Shown here: positions 1 to 22,312 of the stretch, piece after piece
Position numbering within the stretch: the stretch's first letter is position 1
Layout of the letters: the number at the start of each line of letters is the position of its first letter
Source: Lepidodermella squamata
Lineage: Eukaryota; Animalia; Gastrotricha
Direction of reading: 5' to 3'
Assembly: GCA_047495785.1 (NCBI GenBank)
Contig: JBLDXI010000032.1
Location: 4,402,001-4,466,000 of the forward strand
DNA length: 64,000 nt
Notes under the pieces: generated by a model
The model's input: the letters and a program-made list of their open reading frames with translations, nothing else
Told to the model about the DNA's origin: nothing
The model's database searches: none
Position numbers and translations under genes: made by a program

Positions 1-3000
1 TGTTTTCACTGTTATTTTTGCCGTCGAATTTTTACTCAAAGCTTACGCTTATCGATTTGAAGAGTTCATCATCGAGCCGTTCAACGTCATCGATGCGGCT
101 ATTGTAGTGATCAAGTAAAAATTTGATTCCTTATAAAGAATTTCCCTTGCAATTCCGTATTTCAGTGTTCTTGATCTCGTTTCGTCCGGATCCTCCGGCG
201 GTGGGTCTGGTTTCGCAGTTTTACGCTTATTCCGTCTCGTCCGTATTGTGAAAATAGTTCGATTCTTGCCTGCCCTTCAGCGCCAGTTGCTAATAATGAT
301 TCACACTGTCGACCACGTGGCAACGTTTTTCGTTCTACTAACTTTTTTCCTGTTCATATCGGCTCTTCTTGGCATGTCGCTTTTCGGATGCAAGTTCTGC
401 GTTATCTACTCAACCCAGCATGGGTCTTCTGAAGAGAGCGCGAATGCTGTACCCGAATTTGTCTCAGTTGGCAGGTGTACATATTCTGTAAAATCGCTCG
501 CCGACTATTTAGCTCAGTTAGCTACGACCGAGTCAGGTGGAGACCAAAATGCAACGAATGCAACGAATGCGCCAGTTCCGCAAGAGCTGATGGAATGCCC
601 GGCAGCAAACTTCGACAACGTCGGGCAAGCGCTGTTCACTGTGCTGCAAATCTTCACTCAGGACGACTGGGGCGCTATAATGAAAAATGGCATGCATTTC
701 ACGACAGATTGGGCCGGTCTTTACTTCATAGCCATCGTCACGCTTGGCAACTACATCATCTTCAATTTGCTCGTCGCCATCCTTGTCGAGGGATTCAGCA
801 GCAAAAGTGTAAGTTTTTGACTGAGAAATCAACCCTTTGCGAAACTTAATTGCAGGAGGAAGCCGTTATGAAAGCGAACAAATTGTTGGCAGCTCAGGAC
901 GATGAATTGAGCACTGCCAAGGTGCCGGTTGATATCGCCGAAGAAGTAAAACGGCAGAATACTATGCTATGGCCGTGCCGCATCGCGCGAAAGTACCACC
1001 TGCGTCTGAAAAGCAAATTTCTAGCGATGTGGAACGCTGACGGCGATGCGAATTTTTCGCTGCTAATTTTCAGACGCGATCACAAGTTGCGCGTGTTTTT
1101 GAACGCAGTACTGACGTCGCAAACCTACGAAAGCGTTCTGCTCGGCTTGGTCTTCGCCTCTTGCTTGTTGATCGCGCTCGAAAACCCGCGCATCGGCAAA
1201 AACAGCTGGGAGCGCCTCGCCCTGAAATCAATCAACCACGCCATCAACATCGCGTTCATGATCGAATGTGTCGGCAAAATAATCGCGCAGGGCTTTGCTT
1301 TCGGTCGCGATGCTTACCTGCGTTCGTGGTGGAACGTCCTCGACTTCTTCCTCATTTGCATTGCATCCGTCGATGTAGCCCTAGATGTGCTTGATCCTAA
1401 TGTAGCCAACCGTAAAATGATACAGGTACTGCGAGTTTTGCGCCTTCTTCGTGCTCTCCGGCCACTGAGAATGATCAACAAAACGCGCGGACTCAAGGTT
1501 GTCATTGAAACATTGCTGATGTCGATCAAACCTATTGGAAATATAAGTAAGCGTTTATACAGCGCGCCTTTAGATAACACTTTAAATTAATTCTAACAGT
1601 TTTGATTTGTTGCTTCTTCTTCGCGATTTTCGCAATTTTCGGAGTTCAGCTGTTCCGCGGCTGTTTCGCGCGCTGCGTCGCTCCAAAGCAAATGCCCGTT
1701 AACTTTTCGCTGATATATCCTGGCGATGGCTCTGACGGTCATAACGTCTCCAAAGAGGCTTACATCCGATGGGCCATGGAGACAATTTCGACTCTCGACA
1801 ACAAAACGCAGTGCTTGAACCACGGCCTAGAGTGGGAGACGGAGTCGTACAATTTCGACTCGTTGCCAGAAGCCCTCATGGCCCTATTCGTTTTTTCGAC
1901 TCTTGACGGCTGGGCTGATATCACGCGAAATGGCGTCGCTTGCGTTGGTGTCGACCAACAGCCTATTCCTAATTACAACCCGTGGAACTTTTTGTATTTT
2001 GTCGCTTTTCTGCTCATAGTCTGCTTTTTCGTAAGACCACTGCTTACTCCCAGGATATTTTGCGTCTTTCAACTGCTCATTTTCAGGCGTTAAACATGTT
2101 TGTCGGCGTTGTAGTCAGCAATTTTCAAAAGGTTCAGCGTAAATTTGAAGCCGAGATGATGGTGGCTGAGCAGGCTGAAAACAAGTTACAGGCCACTGTT
2201 TTCAAACGTATGTATCGTCGCCTGTCGACAGCTGCAGGTCGTAAAGTGGGAACCTGTTGCGCGAGACGAGATGAGCAGACTGCTTCTGGAGGGTCCATGG
2301 CTCGGGCAAAACTGCGCTCGTTGTCTCGCCAGAAGGCTATTGACGAGGGCAATGTCAACCAGTTTGAAATACTTTTCGGGGCTGAAAATCCAGAGCTAGC
2401 TTTTCTGTTCAATTACCCAACCTGGCGAGCGCGCCTCTACGCTTTTGTGAATCATCGATATTTCGAGTTGGTGAATCAACATTTTCAATGCAATCCGTGA
2501 TTTATTCCCTTATTAAAGGTTCGTTATGACCGCTGCGACAACTATAAATGTTGTATCAATGGCTGTCGAGTTCTACAACATGCCCCTGGCTCTTCAACGC
2601 ACTTTCGCGTACATGGGCCATGCGTTTCTCGGCCTCATCGTCGCCGAAACTATTTTGAAATTCGTTGCGCTCGGCATCGCGCGTTATTGGCGAGACAAGT
2701 GGAACCGTCTAGACTTGATCATTCTGCTGTCATCGATATGCGCGACTGTGCTGGACGAACTAAACACTGAATCTCTCCCTCTCGACCCGTCCATCATTCG
2801 AATTGCAAGAATTTTCCGAGTTTTCCGCATTCTTAAACTCTGGCGAGCTGCACAGGGTGTTCGGCGGTTGTTGCGGACACTAAGCCAAGCTATTCCTCAG
2901 GTATAAATTGCTTATCATTATACTTATATCATATCCAACGGATGATTTGCAGGTTGGCCATTTGTCTGTGCTGTTTTTGCTGTTGTTTTTCATATACGGC

Positions 3001-5727
3001 TCCCTTGGAGTTGAGCTTTATGGCCGCCTGACGTGTGAAGGCCGCGTTATCAACGATTGCGAAGGGCTGTCGCGCCACGCAAATTTCGAGAATTTCGGCA
3101 CAGCTCTGCTCACCCTGTTTCGAATATTCACCGGCGATGACTGGAACGGCATCTTGAAAGATGTTCTACGTCTATCAAACGACGATGACACATGCAAAGA
3201 GCTGGAATCGTCTGAGGATGAAGACCAGCAGGGCATCAACTGCAATATCATCCACTTCGCTTCCCCGTTTTATTTCGTGTCATTCGTATTGATTGCCCAA
3301 TTTGTCCTTATCAACGTTGTTGTTGCTGTTTTAATGGTTAGCCTAATTTTTTTATTCTACCGCAATTTATATTGATTTTTATTTTGCGGCGTCTTCAAGA
3401 GACAAATCGAGGTAAGCCATACCATATGCTTTTATCGCCCTATTCAACATTGGTATGTTTTCCAGGATGCTCACAAAGATACAAATGTCGCAAGTGCTAT
3501 TCTTCATACGAGTCAGGCTACAGGTGTTTCGCATCGCTTGAGAAGGAACAGAACTAGGGAAACGGCATTCATCGATGGGGTTCGTTTTTTGTTTACACGG
3601 ACCTTGAATTTACATATCGTTAGCGACGTTAGATTTAATTAAGATACACTTGGCTCTTGTTGTCATTTTTGCCGCCGAAGATGTTGCGTTAGGTCTGACC
3701 CAGTTTTTTTTCACCGGCTTTTGTTTACCACCACCTATCCCAGCTTGGACGCGAAGAAAATTTGGGAGATATGCCCATTTTTCGGCGTGCTGTATACTTG
3801 TCGCTTTGCTAGAAGACTACCGATATGATACCGCAGCGCAATGGAATACGGGACGCCTTGGCCATTTTACAGCCTAGTAATAGCATCCAACTACGAGTTC
3901 AAAAGCAGCGTCAGTGCGCCCTAATTCAGCTCTAATTTTGCATCTGTCAAATTTAAATAAGCCGCAAATCCGGTCAGAAAAATGATTACCTGGCCAGTCA
4001 ATAAAACCTAATTATCATTCATCTCATTTATTTTCCCTGCAAGAAGTATACTTACAGTAATCTATAGTTTTCGATCGCATAATGATGGGCTCGTGAAATT
4101 GATATGTATCTGAAATATGAAATCAGCTTAACTATCGCGAGCCTGAGGAATTTATAGCAGTCACCTAATTACGGTATATTGAAAGACAGGCGCGGATGCT
4201 GCTTGTGTCTGTGTCACTTTTATTCAATTTTGTGACAACTCTACTTCGCTTCTGTAAATTTTCCAGATAACTAGAATTCTTACCAGTCTGACAACTGGAA
4301 ATATTTCTGTGCACAGGAATATCTTGAATTCCATAATAATAACATCTTCACTCAGTTATTCAGCACATCATTTTATTACCGCTCGCAGACGAACCACTCA
4401 GATCATCCATAAGCCAGGAAGGATTACGATGAGATAATCATCGTGTTAGAAGCCAAAAAACTTTTTTTTCATCGCAACTGATGTCAGGGGTTGAATGATT
4501 TGGGTGAAATTTCTAGTTTAAAACTCACATGATTTCAAGCGATTAGAGCGATGCTGCGCTAAGTTGTCCGCGTAATTTATCTCTCGGCCTTGGGTTTTAA
4601 AGTAGCTTTTCATCTTGCAGCTTTTCACTTTCGGTGATTATTAACATTTCGGAATTCCCATTATAGCGGGAAATAATAAATCTCAAGATTGCTATATCAC
4701 CTCCTATATATTTTGGCTGCTCCTCTATTGACATCAATGCGATTTTACCATCGGGTGGCTTTTTGGCGCGTTCGAGAAGGCAAAGCGAAGAAAAGCTCTT
4801 GCGTTCTAAAGGAACTCACGTTTCGGAATTCCGACTTCTTGAAGGTATCAATATATTTATAATATGTAATATACTCAGAAATACGCAGAGCTTTCATTGT
4901 TTTTCAAATTCGTGACAAGCGGGGCTAATGTTTGTATTAGAACCCTTGCTGAGTTATGCAATTAACAGTCAAGTTGTTGGCATTTAGTTTTATCGTATAA
5001 GAGCCGCAGGGCTATTTTTTACAGTCGATTAATAATCACTTCCGTTCCCTTTTTTCTTCAGGTTGACTTTTCTTCGATGCCTACGAACAACAGCGGAAAA
5101 ATTTCATTGGATTTGCTTGATGATGAATTCATGGTACTATTTCCGCATAAAGTTTATTCTTAATAACTCCTTTCTTTGAATCAGATTATGAAATTGGAAA
5201 GATTGGCGCAAGGTCTAGATGACGACGATGATGTGATAACAGAGGAAGAACTGGCAACTCTGGCGATGCGGAAACACCAACGGCTGATGCGCGAACAAGA
5301 CGAAAGGCGGCGGTTGTTGACTCTTCAGCCAACGGCATCCTCGGCTTCGACTCAAAGTCGGTTGAGCCACCAGCCGTCCGTGCATCTCACCGCTGCAAAC
5401 ATCACAATCGTCATCGACGATGACAGTCGGTCATCTACTTCGAGCAGCAGCAGCAGCGGCAGTGCCACGTCTGAGCGTAGAGACAGCGTGACGGCTGCTC
5501 AGCGAGCGCTGGACAGCCGCGTAATTCGAAGAATGGCGTCAAATACATTCACTAATCCTCCATCTACCCTTAGATCGCCCGAACAGCATTTGTTCAGTAG
5601 GCAGCTTCGGCAGCTGAAGCAGCAGCTTATCGGCGGCGACGATGGCGGCGGAGATTCGTCTTCTGTTGTGCCGGAAACATTTCCAAAATTCGTCTACTTC
5701 AAACGCGGCGAAAAAATTATTAGTTAA
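1..5727 (+). CDS. Cav3: T-type (Cav3-like) voltage-gated channel alpha1 subunit, copy 1; 5'-partial (domain II S2 to C-terminus)
   Basis: Exons approx <1-114, 166-808, 856-1546, 1600-2030, 2087-2466, 2519-2900, 2953-3336, 3400-3411, 3466-3579, 5062-5133, 5185-5727. Cav3 signatures: [66 protein letters not shown]. Pore loops TQDDW / STLDGW / TGDDW. The C-terminal exons after 3400 are less certain. Confidence 0.9.
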
Positions 5728-6758: not shown

Positions 6759-9700
6759 ATGAACAGAAGCGATGACATCGAAGCAGCCGAAGAACCTCTC
6801 GAAGAAGCTACTACAGCTCTGCCACCCTCCGCCTTTGTTGTAACAACAGACAGCATAAACGATGTTGAGAGCCCTGCTGCCGCTGCCGCTGCTGGCGATG
6901 ATAGGCCGCCATCGTCGCAGCCATCAAACAAGTTTTCGGAAAAGGCTTGCTTTTTGATCGGCCCCGAAAACTCATTCCGTCGCGCTGCTATTCGACTCGT
7001 CACGTCAAGATAAGTGTTTAAAATTCAAAGAAAAATTTCAAATTTTTTTTTGCTCTAATTACCCTTTAAACTCTATTTGTACAAAGTTTCATAGTTAGGG
7101 GCCCCAGGAAACTAGGTCTGGGCGCTAACGGGTTAATGATATAATGTCCCTTTTTCGAGGTTCTTTTGCCGATTTTTGTTCAAATGAATTTAACCCCATT
7201 CGTTTCATTTGAGGTTTTTCATTTCTATTATGGAAAATTATTCCTACCTTTATTTTGCTTGCTTCTTATTTTACATGGTTCGAGCGGTTTTCGATACTCA
7301 TGATTATCGCGAACAGCGTGACGCTGGGCATGGCCGATCCGTGCGACGTCGGCTGCCGCAAGCCGCTGTGCGAAGCGCTCGAAATCGTAGAGCACGTAAT
7401 TTTCGGGTTCTTTTTCGTCGAGATGCTCATCAAAATGCTGGCAATGGGCGTTTACGGCCCGAAGGCCTACCTCAACGAACCGTGGAACTGCTTCGACTTT
7501 TTTATTGTGATTGTCGGGTAAAACTTAGTATTCATTTTTAAATCTAAATATCTGAGTTTTCTTATGACGAAGCATTGCCGAATACCTGTTTTCAGAGCAA
7601 GATATTAATTTGTCGGCGATTCGCGCCCTTCGTGTTTTGCGTCCTCTGCGAGCCATCAATCGAATCTCAAGCCTGCGACTTCTTGTAACTCTTATCCTCG
7701 ATATTTTGCCAATGCTGGGCAATGGTAATAGTTCTTGCTGAATCCATAATTTAAAGATTTATCTCGAATTGTGCTAGTGATGATATTCTGCGTCTTCCTC
7801 TTCTTCGTCTTCGGCATCATCTCCGTTCAGTTGTGGGCCGGCGTTCTGCGGCAAAGGTGTTTCTTCCCTGAAATCAGCGCTTCCGATAACACTTCAGTCA
7901 ATGAAGTTTGATATTTACAATTCGAGCTTCATTCGAAATTATATTTTTTGTGATTTTAGCAACCACCCGATTTCATGCCAAAACATTATAAATTATCGCA
8001 CGATGAATACGTGTGCTCGCCTATATTCGGCATGCGTACCTGTGACCAAATACCGTTGTTTGAGTGGGTTTACTTTCCTTGTTATTTTCTCCCTTTGTTA
8101 TAGTTTTGCCGATTTCAGGGAACATGGCTCAATGTGCAATGAATTATTCGCAGATGATCCTAGCAAGTTGGCTACGTGCCATAAGTGGGTGCTCAACTAC
8201 ACCGACTGTCGCGCTGAGGCTGAAAATCCCGGTTATGGAATGACGAATTTCGATAATATAGGGTAAGCATTGCTTGAGGTTATATTGCTTAATCCTTACT
8301 GATTTCTGTCTAGATACGCATCAATCGCAATATTCCAGGTGATTTCGTTAGAGGGATGGGTCGACGTGATGTACTATGTCCAAGACGCGTTTTCGTTCTG
8401 GGCCTGGACCTATTTTGTTCTTCTCGTCCTCGTATGAAATTTCAGTATTCAGCATTCATAATTCTATTTTTCCCTTGATAATTCTAGCTCGGATCCTACT
8501 TCGCAGTCAAACTTTGCTTGGTTGTAATTGCAGCTCAATTTTCGGTTACTCGAATGAGGGTGAAGGAAAGGATTGTTAGTAATTTTTTCAATCAATACCA
8601 TGCCATGATCTAGGCTTACTTTTGTTTCAGAGAGAGGAGCGAATAGAAAAGGCGCGTGAGAAGGGAATATCCGAAGACCAGTTGTCTTGTTCATCAGACA
8701 GTTCCGACGACGAAAACGGCGGACTGTACGCCCAAATTCTCGACCTCCTCGTCTATCTAGGCAGACAGGCCTTCCGGACAGTCTGCCGGGCCAAGTTCAA
8801 AAACGACCGACTACTCGCCATCGCCATGGTACCTCGTGGCACGCGAAGCCGCGTGTGCACCACATGCCAATCGACCATCACTGTTCCAGAGGATCAAGCT
8901 TGCCCGACTTGCGATGAGAAGCGCGTCAAAGAGGAACGGCATAAAAACGATCAGTCACCACTGGGCCGATTGAAGCGTGGTATTTTCGTCAGTCGCATGT
9001 GGATTCGGAACATAACAGAAAGCGACCGTTTTCAGGCCTTCATCGCCGGTCTCATAGTCATCAACGCAGTCATAATGGGCACTGAACACTATGGCCAGGT
9101 AAGTTGAGTTTTAAATTCGAATTGACCGGGAACTTTAATCTTTTGCTGAATAGCCTGAAGAGCTGACTGATTTCGTTGAGATTACCAATGCTGCATTCAC
9201 TGTTGTTTACGTGCTCGAGCTCATCGTGCGATTCTATGCGCTGGGTCCTCAAACTTTCATCCGAGAGGCTTTCAACATGCTCGATGTTCTCGTTATTATC
9301 ATCAAGTAATAATTGATATCTCAAGAGCTGATTAAATTGTTTTCCTGACTATATTTCAGTATGGTTGAGCTATTGGACAGTCGACAAGGTGGCTCTGGCC
9401 TGTCTGTGCTTCGCCTTTTTCGCTTATTCCGGCTCGTGAAAATTCTGAGATTTTTACCTGCCCTACAAAAACAGCTCATCCTTATGTTACATACCGTCGA
9501 TAACGTCGCAACCTTTTTCGTTCTGCTTTTCTTCATCATGTACGTGTCAGCCCTGCTGGGGATGAACTTGTTCGGCTGCAAGTTCTGCCCGCATGCCGCT
9601 GAGTCAGCTTCGCAGGTCGACCAGGTCGCGTACTCGGTGAATGTATCGGATGACATCAAAGTCACGTTCATGGGCTCGTGCCGTTTCAAAGTTCTGCCAC

Positions 9701-12700
9701 TGGCCAGCCCTGCAAAGGTGGAAACGACGCCGCTGATCGGCGGTGCGAAAAGCGACAAAGATGACGATGAAGTCGATTGCACGGAGGCCAACTTTGACAC
9801 TGTTTTCCATTCGCTGTTCACGGTTTTGCAAATTTTCACGCGTGACGATTGGGCGGCGGTCATGCGAGACGGCATGTTTTACACCAGTGAATGGGCGGCG
9901 ATCTATTTCGTTGTACTGGTCACCGTTGGCGATTACATCATCTTCAACTTGCTAGTCGGTATCCTCGTGGAAGGATTCAGCAGTAAACAGGTGAGTTAAC
10001 ACGGCTTAATTGGAGAAATAATCCTCTCGCGAAAAATTACTCCGAATGTTAAGATCGAAGCATGGGATCGGGAAGTTCGATTTGAGAGCTTTTTCGTCCC
10101 TTTTCAAGAGCGAAAATTGTCTAAATTGGACTATTTCGGGTGAGTCCGTTGGGCTTCATGTTAATTTTACGGTCAAACGGACTCGATAAACCGAAACTGG
10201 TGGTCTAAGCTGGACCGATTCTGTGGTCAAAATCCGGTCTAAGCATGACAATGGTCTTTATCAGAGGATTTGAGGGGAAATACAGCACCTACTTGACAAA
10301 CTTCGCCCCACAATTTTTGAAATTTTGAATCGGTCAAAATAACCGACTGTTTTTATCGAAATTATCGAATTTCAGTTGAAAATAACCGGAACATTTTTCC
10401 AAGAGGCCTTATTACGGCATAGACAGTTTTCACTGTACATGGCTAATGTTTTCCAGTCTAATGATTTTAATGATTTTCACCTGCAATTTGTAGGAAGAAG
10501 AGCTGGAGAAGCACATGCATAAAAAAGCCGACAAAGAGGCGTTGGAAAATAAGCAGAACCAGCCTGTCATCGTAGGACCTGGCTGTCTAGAGCGGATAGC
10601 TGCCTATTTCGACGCCCTGGGTACTGATGCTGCTTTATTTATTCTACCCGCCGACAACGTGCTGAGAGTGGCGCTCAAAAAAATTGTTTCATCCACAATG
10701 TGGGATTCTGTTTTTCTGTGTTTCACCCTGGTAAGCTGCGGCGTTATCGTCTTGGAACGCCCGGCGATCGAGGCCGAGAGTCAGGAGCGGTTCATACTTA
10801 CTGTCACATCATACACCGTCAGTTTGATATTTCTTATCGAGGCTTTGGCGAAAATTCTGGCAAATGGCTTCATCCTAGGCAGAGAGGCGTATCTAAGGAA
10901 CGGATGGAATGTTCTCGACTTCTTTCTTCTACTACTCGCCGGTGTCGATTTGTTCCTCGAGCTCATTCATTCTAATGTGGCCAATAAAGGGCTGATTCAT
11001 GCATTACGGCCAGTTCGTCTGCTGCGCGCCCTCCGCCCACTGCGCCTCATCAGCCGGGCGCAAGGCCTCCGAGTTGTCCTCCAGACCCTCGCTCTGTCAG
11101 TTAAACCGATCGGGCACATCATTCTCGTTTGCTGCTTCTTCTTCGGCATTTTCGCCATCCTCGGCGTGCAGCTGTTCAGCGGATGTTACGCGAAATGCGT
11201 GCCGCCTCGTGCCCACGGCCATGCGTCTGAATTGGCCGAAAACATGACAACAACACTGTCATCCCTGCCTATTTGGAGCATGACAGAGGCGCAAATCGCT
11301 GAATTGATCGAAAAAGTGAAAACACGCGCCGAGTGCGTCGGCCACGGCCTCGAGTGGGAGATCGAATCGTACAATTTCAACTCACTGCCAAGCGCTCTGA
11401 TGGCGCTGTTTGTCTTCGCTACACTGGACGGTTGGAGCGACATCACGCGGAAAGGCGCGAATTGCGCTGGGCCGGACCTTTCGCCTGAGCACGGCGCGTT
11501 TGCCTGGAGTTACGTCTATTTCATATCGTTCCTTTTCATCGCATGCTTCTTCGTGAGTGATTATTTTGTAATTTATTCGCTGAAATTCATCGTTTTCTTC
11601 CAGGCTTTGAACATGTTCGTTGGTGTGGTTGTGAATAATTTCCAAAAGGTGAACGCCCGAATGGCCGCTGAATTGGCGCTAGCTGCGAAGGTCAAAACAT
11701 CGGAAATTTTGCTTGATCGATTGCGAAAACGGTTCTTTCCGAGCCGCGGCCGCTGCGCTCGCTGTTTTGGCGGTAAAACTCCATCGAACGCTAAAAGCGC
11801 ACGAAAGGCCAACTTTTGGGAAAATTATTCTCCGTGGCGATTGGCTATTTACAAAGTTATGACTCATCCTACCACTGAGGTAAGTCGAAATTTTTAGCAG
11901 GACCTTTGCTTTTGTGCTTAAATTCATGGGGAAAGCCCAGTAGCCCGAAAATTCTGCCGAAATGAATGAATCTAAATTTGTGCACCACTAAAAATGACGT
12001 TCAAGCCTTGAAATTGAGCGTCCTAGCATTTAATTTATGGCTTCGTTGCGATTTCGGCTTTTTCGTTTGTTGATCGACTATGCTATGTAGAAAAATTATC
12101 GGTGTTCCAAGCTGTTTGATATTGTAGAAATCGCTGATTTTCAAAATCGATACCTGAAATCAATATCGGCTCTGCATGCCGAAGTATAAATCGTAAACTA
12201 ACCGCTCATGGCGCAAAGTGCCCTTAGTATTGAGCTATATCAGCTAGGCATGACAAAAAATTGAGATTCCAGGGTAGACGTGGCATTCGAATTGTTAGAC
12301 TTTGGGAAATGTAGTGCCGGAGGTCCAAACTTATTGCTTATTGTTGGAGCCCTAAATTTAGGGCGTGAACTTGGTACTCTTGATCTCAATTCGACCATAT
12401 AAATGCTGAAATGCTATGGAAAAAATTCGAAATTAATAATCGATCCAACCTAAACGATTTCATCCAAGATTTAATGATAAGATCAATTCTTTGAATTAGA
12501 TGGTTGTTATGGGCGCTGTGGCAATAAACGTGCTTTCGATGGCGACCGAGTCTTACCGCATGCCCGAGTGGTTGGATCGAGCCGCCAATATCACCGGTTA
12601 CGCTTTCATGGCCCTCCTGACACTGGAGATGATCCTTAAACTAATCGCTCTCGGCATCAGGCGGTACATTGCCGACAAATGGAACCAACTCGACCTCGTT

Positions 12701-14074
12701 GTTACGCTTTCCTCATTCGCCGGCGTTCTTTTGGAGAACATTGACACGCAACTACTGCCGCTGAATCCTTCGATTGTTCGCATTGCAAGAGTTTTTCGCA
12801 TTGCGCGTATCATCAAGTTGTGGCGCGCGGCCAAAAACTTGCACGCACTCCTTGACACGGCGAGCGAGGCAATTCCTCAGGTCATCAATCTTTCGATTCT
12901 GTTCGTGCTGCTATTCTTTATCTACGGCTCACTTGGCGTGCAGCTATACGGCCGGTTCGACTGCCAGTACGAAAAGTGTGATGGGCTATCGCGACACGCC
13001 AACTTCCGCCACTTCGGCATGGCCATTTTAACGCTATTTCGAATATTCACGGGCGATAATTGGAATTACATTCTGAAGGATGTCCTTCGCATGTCCCACG
13101 ACCCGAAGCTCTGCGAAACCGTGGCCAGCGAGGAGAATGAAGCGTCGACCGGTCTCAGTATTCCGTGCGGGGTCATAAGTGCCGTCGCGCCGATTTACTT
13201 TGTCTCGTTTGTCCTTCTAGCCCAATTGTGAGTTTATTTTTTGCTTTAATAATAACAAAAATTCATGTGTTTAATTTTCAGTGTGCTAATCAATATTGTG
13301 GTGGCGGTGCTAATGCAACAAATCGAAAACGTTCACATGCGGGAACTGGAGGAGGAGAGGCGCGCATCGGCGAAAGCTCGCGAATCTGCCAACACAAAAA
13401 TGCCAGAAATCGTCGAAATCATTCAAAAGCATGCCTTCGAAGATTTGGCAACTCAAGAGGTTGGTTTCAATATCATTCATAAAAAGCTGGTGTATATAAC
13501 CGCTCTATTTGAATAGGAGCCCGTGCTGTTACCTGGGTTCAATACCTGGGAGGTGATCAGCATCGTGTCTACCGACTACGTAATTCGCCAGGAAATTTGC
13601 GATGCTGCTTACCTGACTGCCCGGCTGCGTCGCCTCATGCGTCGCCAGGGCCCTAATATCGCCGTCGACCGTGACGGGGACATTTCGATGCAACACACTG
13701 CAATACCCGTCTGCGCGACTCCATCCGGTTCGTCGACGCTCTCAGCCTCGGCGTCAATTGGTGCCCGCACCCTTCGCGCGTCGCCCTCCGTCCTCACGGT
13801 CGGTCATTCACCGTCCTCAACGGTGCGTCGCTCTTCCCTGGTCTACGACTGGCGCGACTGGCGGCGCGTGGCCGAAGAAATCAGCAGTGATTTCGCGCGC
13901 ACGCCAGACCGGGCGCAGGCGATAGCTGCTTACCTGGAGATGCGGCAACGGCAGTTGTCTCGCGCCTCTTCAGGCGCGATGTGGACAAACTGGGACGATG
14001 CGGTGCTGCCCAGTCCGTCGATATCGGAACAGCTCGTCGAGTGCGCGTCGTGCCAGTTCGACACTTGGGACTGA
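6759..14074 (+). CDS. Cav3: T-type (Cav3-like) voltage-gated channel alpha1 subunit, copy 2 (complete, filter EDDD)
   Basis: Exons approx 6759-7009, 7275-7517, 7573-7724, 7778-7905, 7960-8063, 8119-8262, 8314-8431, 8488-8574, 8631-9098, 9154-9305, 9360-9990, 10494-11552, 11604-11879, 12500-13227, 13282-13459, 13517-14074. Four intact S4 segments. Pore loops SLEGW (E 8351), TRDDW (D 9844), TLDGW (D 11427), TGDNW (D 13055). Gating-brake-like helix-loop-helix after IS6. Confidence 0.92.
7010..7274 (+). other. AT-AC intron (265 nt) in Cav3 copy 2, donor ATAAGT
   Basis: Joining ...TCA AG|ATAAGT...TTTTAC|A TGG TTC GAG restores [15 protein letters not shown], colinear with the intronless copy 3 sequence [15 protein letters not shown]. 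Read-through hits TAA, and no GT-AG pair preserves the W-F-E residues. Confidence 0.8.
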
Positions 14075-14568
14075 GCTCGCATTTTCTAGTCAAAAATAAG
14101 CAATCAGCTCATCCGTGTTATGACGCATTTAACGTGCCTTCTGAGACTAGCTTTCTTATATAAATTATTGTGAAAAAAATAAAGCAGAAGAGTATAATTT
14201 ATTCTGTCTGGAACTTGATTTGGTGTTGATTTCGCGGCCTCATTTGGTTTTATTTTGGAATGTGTGATCCTATTCCGGTTTTGCGTTTTTGGTTGTGTTT
14301 TTGGTCGACTAGACCTAAAATCAACTGCGTCCCAAGGGGATATTTTTTTGGTGACTCGCGATGTGAGACGTTATGAGGCTGAAGGAATATATTTTCGATT
14401 TATTTTCAAGCGAAGCTGATCATTATGAAGCGTCCCAGGACTAACCTAGATTTCGAGGCTGTCTTCGCCCTCTATTCCCATCTGCCCCGCGTTTTTCTCC
14501 TTCTATTAACAGTGAATGAGTTTAAATTATTGTAGGCTATGCTAGCTTAATGCCGTTATCCACCTGGA

Positions 14569-15045
14569 TGTATTTTCAACTCTGCAATCTGTTGAGATGC
14601 TTTTCGGCTCTGCCGTTGGAAAATCAGCGCTCCCACCTGAATACGTATTATGTAACGCAGTGATGTAACGCTGGTTCAAGCTCGTGCATAGTTACAGTCA
14701 GCAATAATATTTGAAGATCTCACCTGGAAGATATCCTACCACGCTGGACAGTCCCTTAAATTATTATCAAATTGTATTGAAACTGAATTTCTGTACACCA
14801 GTTCCATTTGATCATTCCGTTCAGCTGGTCGCTTTATTCCATCTTATTACGCTAAATAACTCTTAAGTAAATACCTGCATTCTGTATCTGCCTTTCTGTA
14901 TTTTCAACTCTGCAATCTGTTGAGATGCTTTTCGGCTCTGCCGTTGGAAAATCAGCGCTCCCACCTGAATACGTATTATGTAACGCAGTGATGTAACGCT
15001 GGTTCAAGCTCGTGCATAGTTACAGTCAGCAATAATATTTGAAGA
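14569..15045. repeat. 149-bp direct repeat (14569-14717 and 14897-15045) between Cav3 copies 2 and 3
   Basis: Both copies read tgtattttcaactctgcaatc...aataatatttgaaga and appear identical by eye; 179-bp spacer. Confidence 0.9.
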
Positions 15046-15626
15046 CCTCTTCGACACTCCTAGTATAAATTCAGTAGCGGCTCGGTGGCTTGGACTTTGA
15101 ACAGCAATGAGACATCAAACAACAATTTTAAAAGTGAAATGTAGAATAACTCTCGTCTTCAGTTCTTCACCAGACGACGCATCGTGTTTCCTGGCTGTCT
15201 TGTTTTCTAATTTTGGCGTGGCTTCATAATTACTTCGCTCAATCTAATAAATCTCGGTCAAACTAGTATGCCTAATGCGTAAACGCTATCACCTGTTTGT
15301 ATTGGTGGCGAAAATAGATAACTGTCTTTTTCTCCCAATTTTCGCCGAAGAATGCCGAAGAATGTCAAAGAATGTCTGCGCATTCTTTCTCGTCATTACT
15401 GTGCACTTCCGCTCAAGTGCAGAAAATTCCTTCTTTTGCCGCTTTTAACGAAGCGAAAAATAGGAAGAATCACTCTTCACATGTCTGAAGTAGATGAAGC
15501 ACGTCCCCTTGGGGAAACAATGTGTTAAAAAATACAGTGCCATGTTACCGGCGCCCCACCGCTGGCGGTTGGGGGCGAGGACGGCTGAAGTAAATCACTG
15601 AATCTGGTTATACATGACTATACGGA

Positions 15627-18600
15627 ATGAACGGTGAAAGCGTGACGCCGCCGAAGCTGCAAGTTGCGGAGAAGTCATTTATTATACTAGGTATCGACAA
15701 TCCTATCCGACGTGTTGTCATCGCCGTCATCTCCTCGGCGTGGTTCGAACGCCTCTCCTTGGCTATGATAACTCTAAACTGCATTGCTCTTGGTCTTGTG
15801 GTAAGCAATTAAAGTTGATTTATTAAACGCTGATTTAAGCTAGTTCATCTCGTAGGACCCTTGCGATGAGAGATGCAAAGGGAAGCTTTGCACTTCTCTT
15901 CAGTACGTTGAGCACGTTCTGTTTTGTTTCTTCGCCGGTGAAATGCTGCTTAAAATGCTCGCCCTCGGTGTGTTTGGCAAAAACTCCTACCTCGCTGATA
16001 TCTGGAACCGTTTCGACTGCTTCATTGTTGTGATAGGGTGATATTGAAATTTGCTTGAATTCTTTTCAATAACCCTGCAAATTACTACCATTTCAGTGCA
16101 AGCGAATATTTATTTACCGACCAATACATAAATCTATCAGCCATCAGGGCGATTCGAGTCCTCCGGCCTCTTCGTGCGATAAATAGAATATCAAGTCTGT
16201 GACTTGCATGAAAAATTGCTTTAATTGTAATTTCAATTTCGATCACGTCAGGTCTGAGACTTCTTGTGACGTTGCTGCTGGACATAATGCCGATGTTGGG
16301 CAACGGTGAGCTTCAATTCAAAGCGACATAAAGAACGATTTTATTGATCTACGTTAATTTCTAGTTCTGATTTTCTGCTGTTTTCTGTTTTTCGTATTCG
16401 GCATCGTTGCCGTTCAATTGTGGGCTGGCCTCCTGCGGCAACGGTGCTTTTTTCCCGCTCATCTGACGAACGAATCTCTGATAGACAAGGTAACCCATTT
16501 GTCAAATTCCGAACACACTTTGAAATGGAGTGTTTCTTAGCCTCCTAGCTTCATGCCTGAATTTTATAAATCGCCGAACAGTGAATTTGTGTGTTCAACT
16601 GCGTTCGGCACGCTCAAATGTGATAACATCATGGAATACGAGTGAGCAATTTGATAACCTGATGGATTTCCTTGTAAATTTCCCCTTTTAGATCATCAAG
16701 CTCAATGTGCAGCCATTTATTCGGTAGCAATGTAACACAACTCGAAAAGTGCCTCCGCTGGGTGGCCAATTATACAGAATGCCGGCCTCATGGCCCTAAT
16801 CCTGGTTAGAAACGTGAACCCATGTAATGCCTTATTTGGGAATTGATACTTTCAGCTCGTGGCACGGTCAGCTTCGACAACATCGGATACGCCTGGATTG
16901 TCATCTTTCAAGTCATCTCCTTAGAAATGTGGTCTGATATCATGTATGTTGTGCAAGGTTAGTCTACTTCTGAAATTTGGAGGAGAATTGCCAAAATTTT
17001 TCTTTTAGACTCTTACTCCTATTGGGTGTGGATTTACTTCGTAATGCTGGTAATGGTAAGTTTGACATGAAAAATCTGTAAGTAATCGGATCTGACTTCT
17101 TTATTCGATCAGCTCGGCTCCTATCTTGCGGTTAATTTGTGCCTCGTTGTGATTGCAACACAATTTTCTGAAACTAAAGCTCGCGAGCGGGAAAATATGG
17201 TGAGAGTAATTCGAACACTGCAGGAAGTTTCTGTCATGAATCTATGTTTCAGCGAAAAGAAAGAATACAAAGAGCGAAAGCTGAAGGCATATCTATTAGT
17301 CAGATGTCGGCGTCAAACGCGAGCTCAAAGGGCCTTTATGGCCAAATCCTGTCGCTGATTAGCCATCTGCTCAGAGTGGCTTTCCGTCGAATTTTGGGCG
17401 AGCAGTTTTTACGTAAGCGAAGCAACAAAGTTGACGCCTTCTTCAGCAAAGAGGTCCAAGAAACCGACTGTCCTTACTGCCGCCACCGAGCCAGGGCGGC
17501 TGGTTTAACTCGTGAAGAAGCGTCAAAGCAATGCGTGGTTTGCGGTAAGAAGCCGAACGTGAGGCAGTATGATGACTCGATCTGCGGCAAATTGAAAGCA
17601 CTCGGTGACAAATTGAGCGATGGCAGAGGTAAAGTCAAGCAATGCCTTCAGCACGACGCAGCCATGGTTGCAACAATGGTCGCTATCACTGTAAATGCGA
17701 TCGTTATGGCTCTTGAACATCACGGCCAGGTGATTTATCATCAGGTGCCAATAACGAAATTCTGTAAAATTTTCATTTTCAGCCTCACGCTTTGACGGTT
17801 TTCATTGAAACGATGAACCTGATTTTCACGGTGATTTTCGTAGTTGAAATACTGCTCAAGTTTTACGCTTACGGTTTGGCCGAGTACTTTGCCGAGGCGT
17901 TCAATACCTTGGATGCAATTATAATTCTCATCAAGTAATTTTTCAACTACGGGTCGTATTTAGTAAATTTACTCATCGATTTTTTGAAGTTTGGCCGAAA
18001 TCTTCTCATCGCATGGTGGTTCGGGACTGGCTGTGTTGAGGCTGTTCCGCTTAGTCCGCCTGGTAAAAATAATTCGGTTCTTGCCAGCACTTCAAAAACA
18101 ACTCCTCGTTATGCTGCACACCGTGGATCACGTGGCGACTTTCTTCTTCCTGCTCAGCTTTTTCCTCTACATTTTCTCGCTACTTGGCATGTCGCTGTTC
18201 GGCTGCAAGTTCTGCGAGATGCTCGACGAGCAGGCAAGCGATGAACCCGGCGACCCGAATCAAACGACCCCGCCCTCTGCTGCCAAGTGCCGTCATCAAG
18301 TCGTCGAATGGCAGGAGTTGAATGAAACTATGGCTGAAATCAGCCGTTATGGCAAATTCGAGCATGACGCGAACGCTCCATTACTGCAGCGGTGTCCTCT
18401 GGCTACCTTCGACAGCCTGTTCGACTCGGTATTTACGGTTCTTCAAGTTTTCACGCAGGACAGCTGGGCGACAATCATGCATGACGGAATGCACTTCACC
18501 GGCGCCTGGGCATCGGTCTATTTCATTGTCCTAGTAACGATCGGTAACTACATCATCTTCAATTTGCTGATCGCAATTCTTGTTGAAGCATTCAGTTCGA

Positions 18601-21600
18601 AACACGTAATTTACTGTTCGCGACATTTTCTTGTTTTAGGATTTATTTTCGTAGGGCGAGGGCGATGATACGACGGATTTTGAAGATTTATTCGGAACTA
18701 ATTCCATGTTAACTCGGGATTCAAGCGGTTATTCTATCAATGTTGCACCAAAGCCCCCTGAAGTTGAGGTTTGATGGGATTAGCGCGCTTAAAATATCCT
18801 GAATAAACCTTGGGAGATTTCATTGCAGAAAGCTAAATTGAAGCGAATTGACCCGGTGGCGTTTTTCACTGCTATTAACCGATCGAAGCGATCACTGTTT
18901 ATTTTCCCTCCGAATGGCCGACTTCGGCGATTTCTTCGTCGCTTCCTGTCACATCGATATTACCACAAAGTTCTGCTTTTCGTCATCCTCGGCAGTTGTT
19001 TCCTGATTGTGCTCGAACGGCCAAGTATCGCGCCGAACAGCGTTGAGCGCCAACTCCTTACAATCGGCACGTACGCCTTCGGCCTAATTTTCGTTTTCGA
19101 AGCCATCGCAAAAATCGTCGCGTATGGCTTTATCCTAGATGAGAAAAGCTACCTTCGGAGCTGGTGGAACATTATGGACTTTGGCCTAGTCCTGCTCGCC
19201 GTCTCTGATATCATCTTAGATTTGCTACCCCAAGGTGACGGCGAGGGATTTGCGGCCTCGTTGCACGAAACACTACGAGTTCTTTCGCTATTACGAGCTT
19301 TCCGGCCTCTGCGAGTTATCAGTCGGGCGCAAGGCCTTCAAGTTGTTCTGAAAACTCTTATGATCTCCGTTAAGCCTATTGGAAATATTGGTATATTTCT
19401 AGGATTAAGCTTTAAACTAAGTTTTCAATTCATTATTTTTCGTTACAGTGCTTATCTGTTGCTTCTTTTTTGGCATTTTCTCAATTCTCGGGGTTCAACT
19501 GTTCAGCGGCTGCTTTTCGCGCTGCACAGTGCCTTCGAAGCAATTTTCAACCGGCAACTTCACCGATGTTTACAACGAAACGTATCTGACGTGGGCAAAT
19601 CTCGCTATCGACAACGTGCAAACGAAAGACGACTGTCTCGAACTCGGTTTCGTCTGGTACACGGAACGCTTCAATTTCGACAGCCTGCCTAATGCTCTAA
19701 TGGCGCTGTTCGTGTTTTCAACGCTCGACGGATGGGCGGCCATCACCCACAACGGCGTGGCTTGTGTTGGCATGGACAAGCAACCAATGTACGGCAACAA
19801 CCCATGGGCGTACCTGTATTTCATCGCATTCCTTCTTATAGTCTGCTTTTTCGTAAGAGATTCCTTTTTTCAAGTCAGCTGTTTGTTTTAATTACTTAAT
19901 TTAGACGCTCAACATGTTTGTCGGCGTTGTAGTAAACAACTTTCAAAAAGTTCAGAAGCAAATCGAAGCGAGGCGGCGTCGCAAGTTGCAGGAGATGCAG
20001 GCGGCTGTTCTGTTGCGTCGACTCAGCAACAAATTCCAGCAAATCGATCAAACTTTAACGACGGCAGACGATATCAATAGAACGCTATTCATGGCATCAG
20101 CTGGTTTGATCGGCCAAATGGGCCAGCGATTCGAAAACAACCAGCGTAAGTTTCAGCCAAAAATAAATGTTACCGTTGACAGGTGAAAAGTGGGGTTTGG
20201 CGAATTTTCTGTATTTACCAGATAATTGCAAAATGCGTGTTGACTGAAAGAAGGACGATTCTTGGATTCCAAGATGTTTTTACTCAGGTTTTCTTGAGGA
20301 TTTTCAAATTTTCAAATTGCAGACCTATAGGTGACAGGCTCAGATCCTTCTTGAAAGACGGGAAACCCCAAATGGTCCTTGAAAATTCTTATCAATATAG
20401 GTTTACGTAGAGACACTAGCTTGATTACACCAAAATTTGTGAATTTCTATCGAGATTCCTCACCTCATTTCGAATTTCGAATGCGCACAGGTGAGTATAA
20501 TTAAAATCTCAGTGTCAAAAATTTCGCTAAGTCCCACTTTTCACCTGTCACAGTCGTTTTTACTACATATTACTGACCTACTGATGATTTAATAGGTAAG
20601 GATAGCGCCAGATTCTGGCTCTACTACCCGAAGTGGCGTCTCTTCATCTTCAACATGTGTCAGAGCAAGGCGTTCGAGTTGACCGTTATTGCGGCCACAT
20701 GCCTGAGCGTGCTGATAATGGCTGCCGAGTTCTACATGATGCCACCTACTCTGCACCTCGTAATTAGCTGCTTCGGCTACTTTTTCCTCGGACTCGTTTT
20801 TCTCGAGCTCGGCATTAAAGTCATCGCATTCGGGCCCCGGCGTTACATTGCCGATCGTTGGAATCAGGTTGATACAATTATTGCCGTGATATCAGTAGTC
20901 AGCATCATATTCGACGAGATCGAGTTCAAGTCACTTCCGATTAACCCCGCCCTGGTTAGGGCGAGTCGTGTCTTTCGAATAGTTCGAGCTTTTAAACTCC
21001 TAAAATCAGCCTCCGGCATGTGGCATTTGATGCATACGATTGGTCAAGCTATCCCTCACGTTTTCCATCTATCGTTGCTGTTTTTCCTGCTATTTTTCGT
21101 CTACGCCTCGCTCGGTGTCCAGCTCTACGGAACTTTCTCGTGCACCTACGACTCGTGTTTCGGGCTGTCGAGACACGCGCATTTTCACAACTTCGGCATG
21201 GCCATGCTGACGCTGTTCCGCGTCTTCACCGGTGATAATTGGAATGAAATTTTGAAAGACGTGCTGTGGATTGCGAATGACCCATCCAAATGCCAAGCTG
21301 CGGCCACATCGATACCGTGCTCGGTCATATCGGTTGTATCACCTGCGTACTTCATCTCTTTTGTCCTCGTGACTCAATTGTTAGTTTTTTTAAGATCATT
21401 AACCATTAAAATTTAATTGATACTTTATTTCAGCGTCCTCATTAATATTGTTGTGGCGGCTCTTCTGAATCAGCTCGAACCCACCAAGGTCGATGATCAG
21501 GCTGTGATTGCGGCAGTTGAAGCTGAAGCCATTGAACGGGTCGAAATAGTTGAGGAAATTGTTGCTGAAAAGTACCGGCAGGAATTTGTAAGCCTAGCTA

Positions 21601-22312
21601 TTTTTTATCAATTTTTTTTATTTCACAATCATGTTTTTAGGACTCGAATCCGTCGATGCGCCGGCTAGACTTTGCCGAACTTGTCGGCATTGTTTCAACC
21701 GAGTACGTGTTGCACGAGCCTATTCACACCAATCGCTTCGGAGCTGTCAGGCCGAGTAGCTTGGCCATTATGTTCAACAGTGCGCCAGCTTTACTGAATG
21801 ACGCCGGAACTGAAAATCAATCCATTCGACAAAATGTCATCAATTACCTGGCCGTAAATTCGGACGTAGCTAACAATGGCGCAAAAAGCGCTGTCACACC
21901 TTCCATAGTTCATGACCCGGATAGCCCTGGTGCGTTGTCGGCCCGAAACAGGCCATCAGCCTCGAGAAATCGTAGCTCGGATGTCAGTGATGTTAGCATT
22001 ATAGATAACGGCCGGTTGAGAAAAGCGATAGGAACCCTGAACAACATGGCTAGGCAGCCTTCAAACATCGATCTGAACCACCTGTCAGTTGCCGGCCACG
22101 ATAGGTCGAATACAGCTGGCGGGTCCGCGGTTGTGTCGGCCTACGTCGATATGCGCCGTTCGCAGATTCTCACGCACCATTCGCCGTCTAATTTTTCGAT
22201 TGTCTCGTCGGCGATCAACTGGGACGTGCCGTCGCATTACTCGACTTCGCCTGCTTCGGCTATGACACGCTCCATTAATGAAGGAGCCAAAAGCCCGTCT
22301 GCGTCCCCATGA
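15627..22312 (+). CDS. Cav3: T-type (Cav3-like) voltage-gated channel alpha1 subunit, copy 3 (complete, filter EDDD; start codon uncertain)
   Basis: About 20 GT-AG exons, from 15627-15800 to the final exon 21641-22312. [18 protein letters not shown] is the Cav3 IS6/gating-brake signature. Pore loops SLEMW (E 16924), TQDSW (D 18459), TLDGW (D 19727), TGDNW (D 21234). AATAAA follows the stop. Confidence 0.92.
20177..20550. mobile_element. MITE-like insertion in an intron of Cav3 copy 3
   Basis: Terminal inverted repeats: tgacaggtgaaaagtggg (20177) and cccacttttcacctgtca (ends 20550), 18 bp perfect and extending imperfectly to about 30 bp. No coding capacity. It accounts for a 450-nt intron among ~50-nt introns. 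Confidence 0.7.

What the first reader, a model, noticed from the sequence alone, without database searches (positions are those of the whole stretch)
1..22312. Tandem array of at least three T-type channel paralogs with a non-canonical EDDD selectivity filter
Seen: three head-to-tail Cav3-like genes. The domain II filter residue is Asp in all three (TQDDW 662, TRDDW 9844, TQDSW 18459), giving E-D-D-D in the two complete genes, and S4 sensors are intact. Known: Cav3 filters are EEDD (DII TQEDW), Cav1/2 are EEEE, and most invertebrates have one Cav3 gene. Inference: a lineage-specific expanded Cav3 subfamily with a wider, Asp-rich filter and probably altered Ca2+/Na+ selectivity. Sharing by three divergent paralogs argues against sequencing error.
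Basis: partly seen in the sequence, partly recalled or inferred. Interest (0 to 1): 0.85.

Follow-up and report, generated by a model that had tools for sequence, protein, structure and literature searches.

The report
T-type calcium channels, altered pore
Three neighbouring, intact genes of a tiny invertebrate encode T-type-like calcium channels in which one of the four pore residues that choose the ion is aspartate, where reviews say this family always has glutamate; the change is old and kept by selection, but its effect on the current is untested.

Summary
Window 1-22312 (+ strand) holds three head-to-tail four-domain channel genes. g1 is cut by the window start. g2 (1758 aa) and g3 (1752 aa) are complete and have no internal stops.

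It aligns with the filter Glu of solved human Cav3.2. g2 and g3 read E-D-D-D; g1 reads ?-D-D-D.

In trees the genes sit inside the Cav3 clade (100/99). They form an old subfamily with five metagenome relatives from two other assemblies, and all eight carry Asp. All 118 named canonical Cav3 proteins I checked carry Glu.

A roughly 3% diverged haplotype or strain shows 20 synonymous and 3 non-synonymous differences in g2 (pN/pS 0.04), so the gene is under purifying selection.

New here: g3 has also lost the domain II "beacon" Asp (TQDSW), which published work links to sodium permeability.

Limits: I found no RNA data, selectivity is untested, and a few cichlid and darter Cav3-like predictions also have Asp. 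The scan already reported this EDDD cluster on DNA just upstream (s1-407581), so this extends a known array. I class it as a new variant of a known kind.

The parts
1..5727 (+). Gene g1, partial. It starts inside domain II S3 at the window edge. Exons: 2-114, 166-808, 856-1546, 1600-2030, 2087-2466, 2519-2900, 2953-3336, microexon 3400-3411, and 3466 onward. The C-terminal part is tentative; ORF 5167-5727 is probably its last exon.
   Evidence: Junction scoring against a Cav3 HMM plus reading of the splice sites.
662..664 (+). g1 domain II filter codon GAC (Asp) in TQDDW. The HFS+1 'beacon' Asp is kept.
   Evidence: alignment
3136..3141 (+). g1 domain IV TGDDW: filter Asp, followed by a second Asp where canonical Cav3 has Asn.
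6759..14074 (+). Gene g2, complete, 16 exons, 1758 aa. Filter E-D-D-D (SLEGW, TRDDW, TLDGW, TGDNW).
   Evidence: Model. All 20 synonymous haplotype differences fall in this frame, 18 of them at third codon positions, and both indels fall in predicted introns.
7010..7274 (+). AT-AC intron of g2 between the N-terminus and domain I S1. It is absent from g3.
   Evidence: It is the only frame-keeping join that gives ...LVTSRWFERF.... Also noted by the scan as s1-391906.
8351..8353 (+). g2 domain I filter codon GAG (Glu).
9844..9846 (+). g2 domain II filter codon GAC (Asp) in TRDDW.
   Evidence: Aligned to the filter Glu of Cav3.2 (9ayg_A).
11427..11429 (+). g2 domain III filter Asp (TLDGW). Leu replaces the Lys found in canonical SKDGW.
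13055..13057 (+). g2 domain IV filter Asp (TGDNW).
15627..22312 (+). Gene g3, complete, 20 exons, 1752 aa. Filter E-D-D-D (SLEMW, TQDSW, TLDGW, TGDNW).
   Evidence: Model built.
16924..16929 (+). g3 domain I: filter Glu followed by Met at HFS+1, where four-domain channels normally have Gly.
   Evidence: PMC10120453
18459..18464 (+). g3 domain II: filter Asp (GAC) followed by Ser (AGC). The 'beacon' Asp is lost.
8631..8800 (+). g2 proximal I-II linker with a gating-brake-like helix-loop-helix ([19 protein letters not shown]). The g3 equivalent lies at about 17253-17420.
   Evidence: It aligns with the Cav3 gating-brake region. The Cav1/2 AID motif is absent.

Best explanation
These are three functional, selectively maintained members of an old and divergent branch of the Cav3 (T-type) voltage-gated calcium-channel family. 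They lie in a tandem array, probably in a gastrotrich (an unchecked lead from other notes of the scan).

Shown: each gene encodes a normal four-domain channel with voltage sensors and a gating-brake-like I-II linker, and has no beta-subunit (AID) or IQ site. The whole branch has Asp in place of Glu at the domain II position of the selectivity ring (E-D-D-D).

Inferred: they still gate like T-type channels. The shorter Asp side chain weakens high-affinity Ca2+ and Cd2+ binding, so the pore passes relatively more monovalent ions and other divalent ions, as in the engineered human Cav3.1 EDDD mutant.

Also inferred: the paralogs differ one residue further out. g1 and g2 keep the domain II 'beacon' Asp and should stay Ca2+-preferring or Ca2+-blocked. 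g3 has Ser there and should be more Na+-permeable. Gene duplication would then supply the pore variants that other invertebrates make by splicing exon 12a or 12b.
For: Intact spliced ORFs of 1758 and 1752 aa.

Best matches to solved Cav3 structures.

Careful ML tree: window clade 100/99; with the metagenome relatives 100/99; with Hydra plus bilaterian Cav3 100/99; Cav1/2 and the protist channels lie outside.

Asp at domain II in 8 of 8 subfamily members from three sources. Glu in 118 of 118 named Cav3 proteins.

Purifying selection on g2: 20 synonymous, 3 non-synonymous and 17 intronic differences against a roughly 3% diverged haplotype or strain; pN/pS 0.043; binomial P = 7e-11.

Gating-brake motif present; no AID or IQ motif. 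S4 ladders intact.

The engineered Cav3.1 EDDD mutant is functional, less Cd2+-sensitive and more permeable to Na+, Cd2+ and Mn2+, and it activates at more negative voltages (10.1101/626069).

Neutralising the domain II beacon Asp makes Cav3 sodium-permeable (PMC10120453).
Against: I found no RNA run, so transcription is not shown.

No electrophysiology exists for any member.

E to D is a conservative change, and the mutant's changes are moderate.

The long four-cysteine domain II turret (69-75 aa) and other outer-pore changes could dominate selectivity in either direction. These include Leu in place of the canonical domain III Lys and the loss of Asn after the domain II Trp.

Selection was measured only on the first third of g2.

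The gene models are not RNA-verified. The II-III and III-IV linkers of g2 and g3, and the g1 tail, may hide small exons.
Confidence: 0.7

Rival explanations
1. They are ordinary T-type calcium channels and the E-to-D change is functionally near-neutral. It was fixed once in the ancestor of the subfamily and carried along since, so selectivity and physiological role match those of EEDD channels.
For: The substitution keeps the charge. The human Cav3.1 EDDD mutant still gives T-type currents with only moderate shifts. The same change appears sporadically in fast-evolving teleost Cav3-like predictions, in cichlids and Etheostoma, which suggests the position tolerates it.
Against: Asp is kept in 8 of 8 members that are only 35-57% identical to each other, while Glu is kept in 118 of 118 canonical Cav3 proteins. 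This means each state is held in its own background. The mutant did show measurable changes in Na+, Cd2+ and Mn2+ permeation. Neighbouring pore positions have changed as well.
Confidence: 0.2
2. They are decaying or silent duplicates (pseudogenes) in a tandem array, and only some other copy is used.
For: No RNA holder was found. g3 has unusual residues: Ser at the second charge position of domain III S4, and Met at domain I HFS+1. The g1 tail could not be modelled with confidence.
Against: More than 5.2 kb of CDS in each of g2 and g3 is free of stops and frameshifts across 15-19 introns, all GT-AG except one AT-AC intron in g2. pN/pS is 0.043 in g2. The indels between haplotypes fall only in introns. 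The transmembrane and pore segments are strongly conserved among paralogs that are otherwise about 47% identical.
Confidence: 0.05
3. They are not Cav3 at all. They belong to a separate four-domain family that merely resembles it, such as the protist-type E-D-D-D channels seen in metagenomes.
For: The representative search found E-D-D-D channels of unknown origin (P0040, P0122). The window clade falls outside the Hydra plus bilaterian Cav3 crown group (95/93).
Against: P0040 and P0122 group with the diplonemid E-D-E-E channels, far from the window clade. The window clade joins animal Cav3 at 100/99, inside the protist EEDD lineages. The AU test does not reject a position inside bilaterian Cav3 (p = 0.108). 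The genes share the gating brake and the protostome-type CxxC start of the domain II turret (FGCKFC, as in Lymnaea and Caenorhabditis).
Confidence: 0.05

Closest known systems
Canonical Cav3 T-type channels (human Cav3.1-3.3, Lymnaea LCav3, Trichoplax TCav3)
   Same: Four-domain architecture and S4 ladders. Best sequence match to their solved structures. Same clade in the tree. Gating-brake-like I-II linker. No AID or IQ motif. Asp in domains III and IV, and TGDNW in domain IV.
   Different: Asp in place of Glu in domain II. Leu or Phe in place of Lys before the domain III Asp. Gly, Ala or Ser in place of Asn after the domain II Trp. A 69-75 aa four-cysteine domain II turret. A very short II-III linker. 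Several tandem genes where invertebrates usually have one.
Engineered human Cav3.1 'CatSper-like' EDDD pore mutant (Garza-Lopez et al., Cell Calcium 2016; bioRxiv 10.1101/626069)
   Same: The same four filter residues, E-D-D-D, in a Cav3 background.
   Different: It is a laboratory point mutant in an otherwise human pore. The channels here are natural, ancient, and carry many further outer-pore changes.
Cnidarian Cav3 gene pair, one with a neutral residue at the domain II beacon (PMC10120453, PMC7382465)
   Same: Pore variants arise by gene duplication and not by exon 12a/12b splicing. g3 (Ser), L001 (Ala) and L004 (Ser) lack the beacon Asp, like the cnidarian sodium-permeable isoform.
   Different: The cnidarian genes keep EEDD and have Asn at the beacon. 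Here the filter ring itself is also changed, and there are more copies.
Percomorph fish 'short' Cav3-like predicted proteins (for example Oreochromis XP_039472111.1, P0021)
   Same: They are Cav3-clade proteins, and a few have TQDDW in domain II, giving E-D-D-D.
   Different: They form an independent vertebrate branch in which most members keep Glu. They are predictions only, and I found no study of them.
Unnamed metagenome E-D-D-D four-domain channels P0040 and P0122
   Same: The same four filter residues.
   Different: They sit in a different clade, next to the diplonemid E-D-E-E channels, and are not Cav3.

Membership tests
Cav3 (T-type) calcium channel alpha-1 subunit | Four homologous 6-TM domains with charged S4 sensors | tested here: met
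   Ion_trans in every domain piece. Full models. S4 alignments; g3 domain III has Ser at the second charge position.
Cav3 (T-type) calcium channel alpha-1 subunit | Groups with Cav3 and not with Cav1/2, Nav or others in a phylogeny | tested here: met
   Careful tree: 100/99 with Hydra plus bilaterian Cav3, nested within EEDD lineages. The clade falls outside the crown group at 95/93, but the AU test does not reject a position inside Bilateria (p = 0.108). NALCN was not in the tree.
Cav3 (T-type) calcium channel alpha-1 subunit | E-E-D-D selectivity filter ('always EEDD', PMC10120453) | tested here: not met
   E-D-D-D in g2 and g3, ?-D-D-D in g1.
Cav3 (T-type) calcium channel alpha-1 subunit | Beacon Asp at HFS+1 of domain II | tested here: inconclusive
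   Present in g1 and g2 (TQDDW, TRDDW). Replaced by Ser in g3 (TQDSW).
Cav3 (T-type) calcium channel alpha-1 subunit | Gating-brake helix-loop-helix in the proximal I-II linker | tested here: met
   g2 and g3 align with the Cav3 motif (..G-LY-QIL-L---L--R-AFR..). This rests on sequence only. g1 lacks this region because the window cuts it.
Cav3 (T-type) calcium channel alpha-1 subunit | No AID (beta-subunit site) and no C-terminal IQ motif | tested here: met
   The alignment shows the Cav1/2 AID block is absent. Pattern searches found neither motif.
Cav3 (T-type) calcium channel alpha-1 subunit | Low-voltage activation and fast inactivation | not testable with these tools
   Needs electrophysiology.
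Protostome Cav3 with cysteine-rich domain II L5 turret (exon 12a/12b type) | Turret begins CxxC and carries further cysteines; alternative exon 12 | tested here: inconclusive
   The turret begins FGCKFC, as in Lymnaea and Caenorhabditis, and has four Cys in 69-75 aa. This matches neither the three-cysteine nor the five-cysteine pattern of PMC7382465. Domain II S4-S6 is a single exon, so there is no alternative exon.

The most novel reading that the evidence does not exclude
The array is a graded set of pore variants made by gene duplication. Members that keep the domain II beacon Asp (g1, g2) would carry Ca2+. Members with Ser or Ala there on an E-D-D-D ring (g3, and relatives L001 and L004) would be T-type-derived sodium channels that supply fast inward Na+ current. 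Other unchecked notes of the scan say that this animal's Nav1 lacks its selectivity Lys and its Cav2 has gained one. If so, the usual assignment of ions to four-domain channel families has been reshuffled in this lineage.
Probability: 0.2. Interest if true: 0.8.

Novelty: new variant of a known kind. Interest (0 to 1): 0.6.

Why it matters
The four-residue ring is the textbook determinant of ion choice in four-domain channels, and a recent review states that Cav3 is EEDD 'from choanoflagellate to human'. This is a natural, ancient, selectively maintained E-D-D-D branch. Its paralogs also vary at the neighbouring beacon position. It therefore offers a ready-made natural experiment on how ring chemistry and the beacon set Ca2+/Na+ selectivity and gating. 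It also shows that some invertebrates expanded Cav3 into a multigene family. The question is directly testable by expressing the genes alongside D-to-E and S-to-D swaps.

Tried and rejected
Sequencing error is rejected. There are three separate GAC codons, the same residue occurs in five relatives from other assemblies, and the gene is covered by contigs of a second, diverged haplotype.

Pseudogenes are rejected for g2 by pN/pS. For g3 the only argument is the intact ORF.

dN/dS between the paralogs was not attempted. At 46-49% protein identity, synonymous sites are saturated.

My first junction finder over-deleted weakly conserved exons and missed short ones. I fixed those joins by reading the DNA.

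The spliced proteins could not be handed to the remote search tools, because no reference exists for them. Searches therefore used single ORFs or retrieved proteins.

Protein searches with P0009 and with the L001 ORF found no named close relative. The subfamily is therefore not in annotated proteomes within the length ranges searched.

The search for sequencing runs returned no RNA run, and it could be made only once. Other agents report RNA for other genes of this genome, so the test is feasible.

I did not try to confirm the organism's identity ('probably the gastrotrich Lepidodermella squamata', from other notes).

I made no structure prediction, because the alignment to solved Cav3 chains settles which residue is which.
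Full report
**What is there**

The + strand of window 1-22312 carries three head-to-tail genes for four-domain voltage-gated cation channels.

- Every large ORF piece matches Pfam Ion_trans.
- The 460-codon domain III ORF of the middle gene matches solved human Cav3.2, Cav3.1 and Cav3.3 best: 330, 327 and 313 bits, against 237 for Cav1.1, about 224 for Nav, and 67 for NALCN.
- The genome has very short introns. I built spliced models by scoring every frame-keeping GT-AG join against an HMM of twelve Cav3 proteins and then reading the DNA at the doubtful joins.

The resulting models are:

| Gene | Span | Exons | Protein | Notes |
|---|---|---|---|---|
| g1 | 1 to about 3642, probably 5727 | 9 modelled | partial | starts in domain II S3 at the window edge; tail tentative |
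| g2 | 6759-14074 | 16 | 1758 aa | one AT-AC intron at 7010-7274 |
| g3 | 15627-22312 | 20 | 1752 aa | |

- None of the three has an internal stop.
- Typical introns are 47-63 nt.
- tblastn finds no further copy between 22.3 and 64 kb.

- HMMER aligns g2 t-r-D-d-w with T-Q-E-D-W of the solved Cav3.2 chain 9ayg_A. Two multiple alignments put the Asp in the same column as the Cav3 Glu.
- Domain I has Glu (SLEGW in g2, SLEMW in g3). Domains III and IV have Asp in all three genes. So g2 and g3 are E-D-D-D, and g1 is ?-D-D-D.
- The S4 segments keep their Arg/Lys ladders. The one exception is Ser at the second position of g3 domain III.

**Are they Cav3?**

I ran a careful maximum-likelihood tree on 31 proteins and 1138 columns. 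Support values are ultrafast bootstrap / SH-aLRT.

- The three genes form one clade (100/99).
- That clade joins two metagenome proteins, P0154 and P0009 (100/99).
- The five together join Hydra plus bilaterian Cav3 (100/99).
- All of these lie inside further EEDD lineages from protist-type metagenome and MMETSP sequences.
- Cav1/2 and a diplonemid-type clade lie outside.
- The canonical Hydra plus Bilateria group excludes the window clade at 95/93. However, an AU test does not reject a tree with the clade placed inside Bilateria (p = 0.108).
- The clade shares the CxxC start of the domain II turret (FGCKFC) with Lymnaea and Caenorhabditis. Vertebrates and Hydra lack it.

On balance I read the clade as a fast-evolving bilaterian offshoot and not a pre-bilaterian relic, but this is open.

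Other Cav3 hallmarks are present. The proximal I-II linker aligns with the gating brake. The Cav1/2 AID block and IQ motifs are absent.

The defining EEDD ring is not met, so I describe these genes as a divergent Cav3 subfamily and not as ordinary members.

**How common is Asp at this position?**

- Of 118 named Cav3 proteins from vertebrates, nematodes, molluscs, annelids and arthropods, all have Glu.
- Of the 50%-identity cluster representatives with a Cav3-type pore, all have Glu except the window clade and one fish protein.
- That fish protein belongs to a clade of short (about 1200-1400 aa) percomorph Cav3-like predictions. Most of them keep Glu, but three cichlid clusters and one Etheostoma cluster have TQDDW.
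- Two further E-D-D-D channels, P0040 and P0122, are not Cav3.
- The full-text library holds one paper that combines EDDD, T-type and selectivity filter, and it concerns an engineered mutant.
[quoted passage not shown] It also says the domain II beacon Asp is always present except in one cnidarian gene, and that only cnidarians and flatworms among non-vertebrates have two Cav3 genes.

**The subfamily is old and conserved**

Contigs from two other public metagenome assemblies encode relatives that are 35-46% identical to the window genes.

| Locus | Assembly | Pore residues seen |
|---|---|---|
| L001 | ERZ23486787 | full E-D-D-D, with TQDAW in domain II |
| L002 / L003 | ERZ23486787 / ERZ23486764 (same biosample) | Glu in domain I, TQDDGW in domain II, Asp in III and IV |
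| L004 | ERZ23486764 | TQDSW |
| L006 | ERZ23486787 | TQDDW |
| L005 | ERZ27333047 | TQDDW |

- All eight available members carry Asp.
- In a tree of the domain II-III region, the eight form one clade against canonical Cav3 (100/98). The window genes interleave with L005 and L006.
- So at least some duplications seem to predate the split of these organisms.

**Selection**

The one public run that holds this DNA (X1, contigs) differs from the window by about 3%, so it is another haplotype or strain.

- Forty differences were listed over 7311-8825 of g2: 17 in my introns, 20 synonymous and 3 non-synonymous (the 3 fall in two codons).
- Of the 20 synonymous differences, 18 fall at third codon positions of my frame and 2 at first positions.
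- pN/pS is 0.043. The binomial probability of so few non-synonymous changes under neutrality is 7e-11.
- The two indels, at 8481 and 11567, both lie in predicted introns. One of these is the in-frame 51-nt intron at 11553-11603.
- This supports both the gene model and purifying selection. It covers only the first third of g2.

The paralogs differ at the position just outside the ring (HFS+1).

- g1 and g2 keep the domain II beacon Asp.
- g3 has Ser there, and Met in place of the near-universal Gly in domain I.
- g1 has an extra Asp at HFS+1 of domain IV (TGDDW).
- Relatives L001 (Ala) and L004 (Ser) also lack the beacon.

Published work links loss or neutralisation of this Asp to sodium permeability in Cav3. 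The cysteine-rich domain II turret is also linked to the Na+/Ca2+ balance, and here it is 69-75 aa long with four cysteines.

**Mechanism**

Shown:
- intact voltage-gated channel architecture of the Cav3 type;
- a conserved E-D-D-D ring;
- purifying selection on g2.

Inferred from the engineered Cav3.1 EDDD mutant: the channels conduct, activate at somewhat more negative voltages, bind Cd2+/Ca2+ less tightly, and pass relatively more Na+, Mn2+ and Cd2+.

Inferred from the beacon rule: g3-type members are more sodium-permeable than g1 and g2.

None of this has been measured. Other pore changes could outweigh it, such as Leu in place of the canonical domain III Lys and the long turret.

**Context and limits**

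- The scan already reported the same E-D-D-D cluster on DNA just upstream of this window. s1-407581 was followed up. s1-407495 notes at least five more genes, and there are also s1-374252 and s1-432035. The array therefore probably holds eight or so genes, and this report extends that finding.
- Other notes suggest the animal is the gastrotrich Lepidodermella squamata, and that its Nav1 and Cav2 filters are also unusual. I did not test these claims.
- I found no RNA run, so expression is unproven.
- The linker exons and the g1 tail are uncertain.

**Verdict**

This is a real, ancient and selectively maintained natural variant of the T-type channel pore, in a multigene array. It is a new variant of a known kind and of moderate-to-high interest to channel evolution and biophysics. 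Its functional meaning is still to be measured.

Noticed in passing
window 7010-7274: g2 has an AT-AC intron (ATAAGT...TTTTAC, 265 nt) between the N-terminus and domain I S1. g3 reads straight through the same site (...[10 protein letters not shown]...). The scan already flagged this as s1-391906.
   Followed up: partly
window 16195-16251, 1547-1599, 19391-19448, 3400-3411: Intron positions differ among the paralogs. g3 has an intron inside domain I S4-S5 that g2 lacks. g1 and g3 have a domain III S5 intron that g2 lacks. g1 has a 12-nt microexon (RQIE) after domain IV S6.
   Followed up: partly
window 14557-14721 and 14885-15049: A 165-nt direct repeat (96% identical, 328 nt apart) lies in the g2-g3 intergenic region.
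   Followed up: partly
window about 32600-63000, mostly - strand: A tandem family of secreted-looking Gly/Ala/Gln-rich proteins (MY.A...ANGAWGAQGAANGG...GRYDHAASLLAASERTSAAAEQAAGDYDNGFAYGGAQGAQGSQGS...) has copies at about 36.6-37.7, 39.5-40.4, 42.0-42.7, 45.6-46.4, 47.8-48.8 and 51.0 kb. The scan has notes on it (s1-391768, s1-391907).
   Followed up: no
proteins P0021, P0303-P0359 (percomorph fishes): A clade of short (about 1200-1400 aa) predicted 'T-type alpha-1H/1I-like' channels has a variable domain II pore. Most have TQEDW, but there are also TQDDW (cichlids, Etheostoma), TEENW and TQENW (beacon Asn), TQYQW and TPDHW. I found no study of these.
   Followed up: partly
proteins P0040, P0122, P0024, P0042, P0052: A separate clade of four-domain channels has Asp in domain II. 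It includes E-D-D-D forms of unknown metagenomic origin and E-D-E-E forms from the diplonemids Sulcionema and Namystynia.
   Followed up: partly
window 7201-13200 against run X1: The only public run that holds this DNA differs by about 3% (131 substitutions in 6 kb). It breaks off or diverges inside the long introns 9991-10493 and 11880-12499. It is a second haplotype or strain, and useful for selection tests elsewhere in this genome.
   Followed up: partly
loci L001, L002/L003, L004, L006 (biosample SAMN13674978) and L005 (ERZ27333047): Small-intron eukaryote contigs in environmental metagenomes carry at least four paralogs of the same channel subfamily in one sample. In L001, domains II and III lie in a single 682-codon ORF.
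   Followed up: partly
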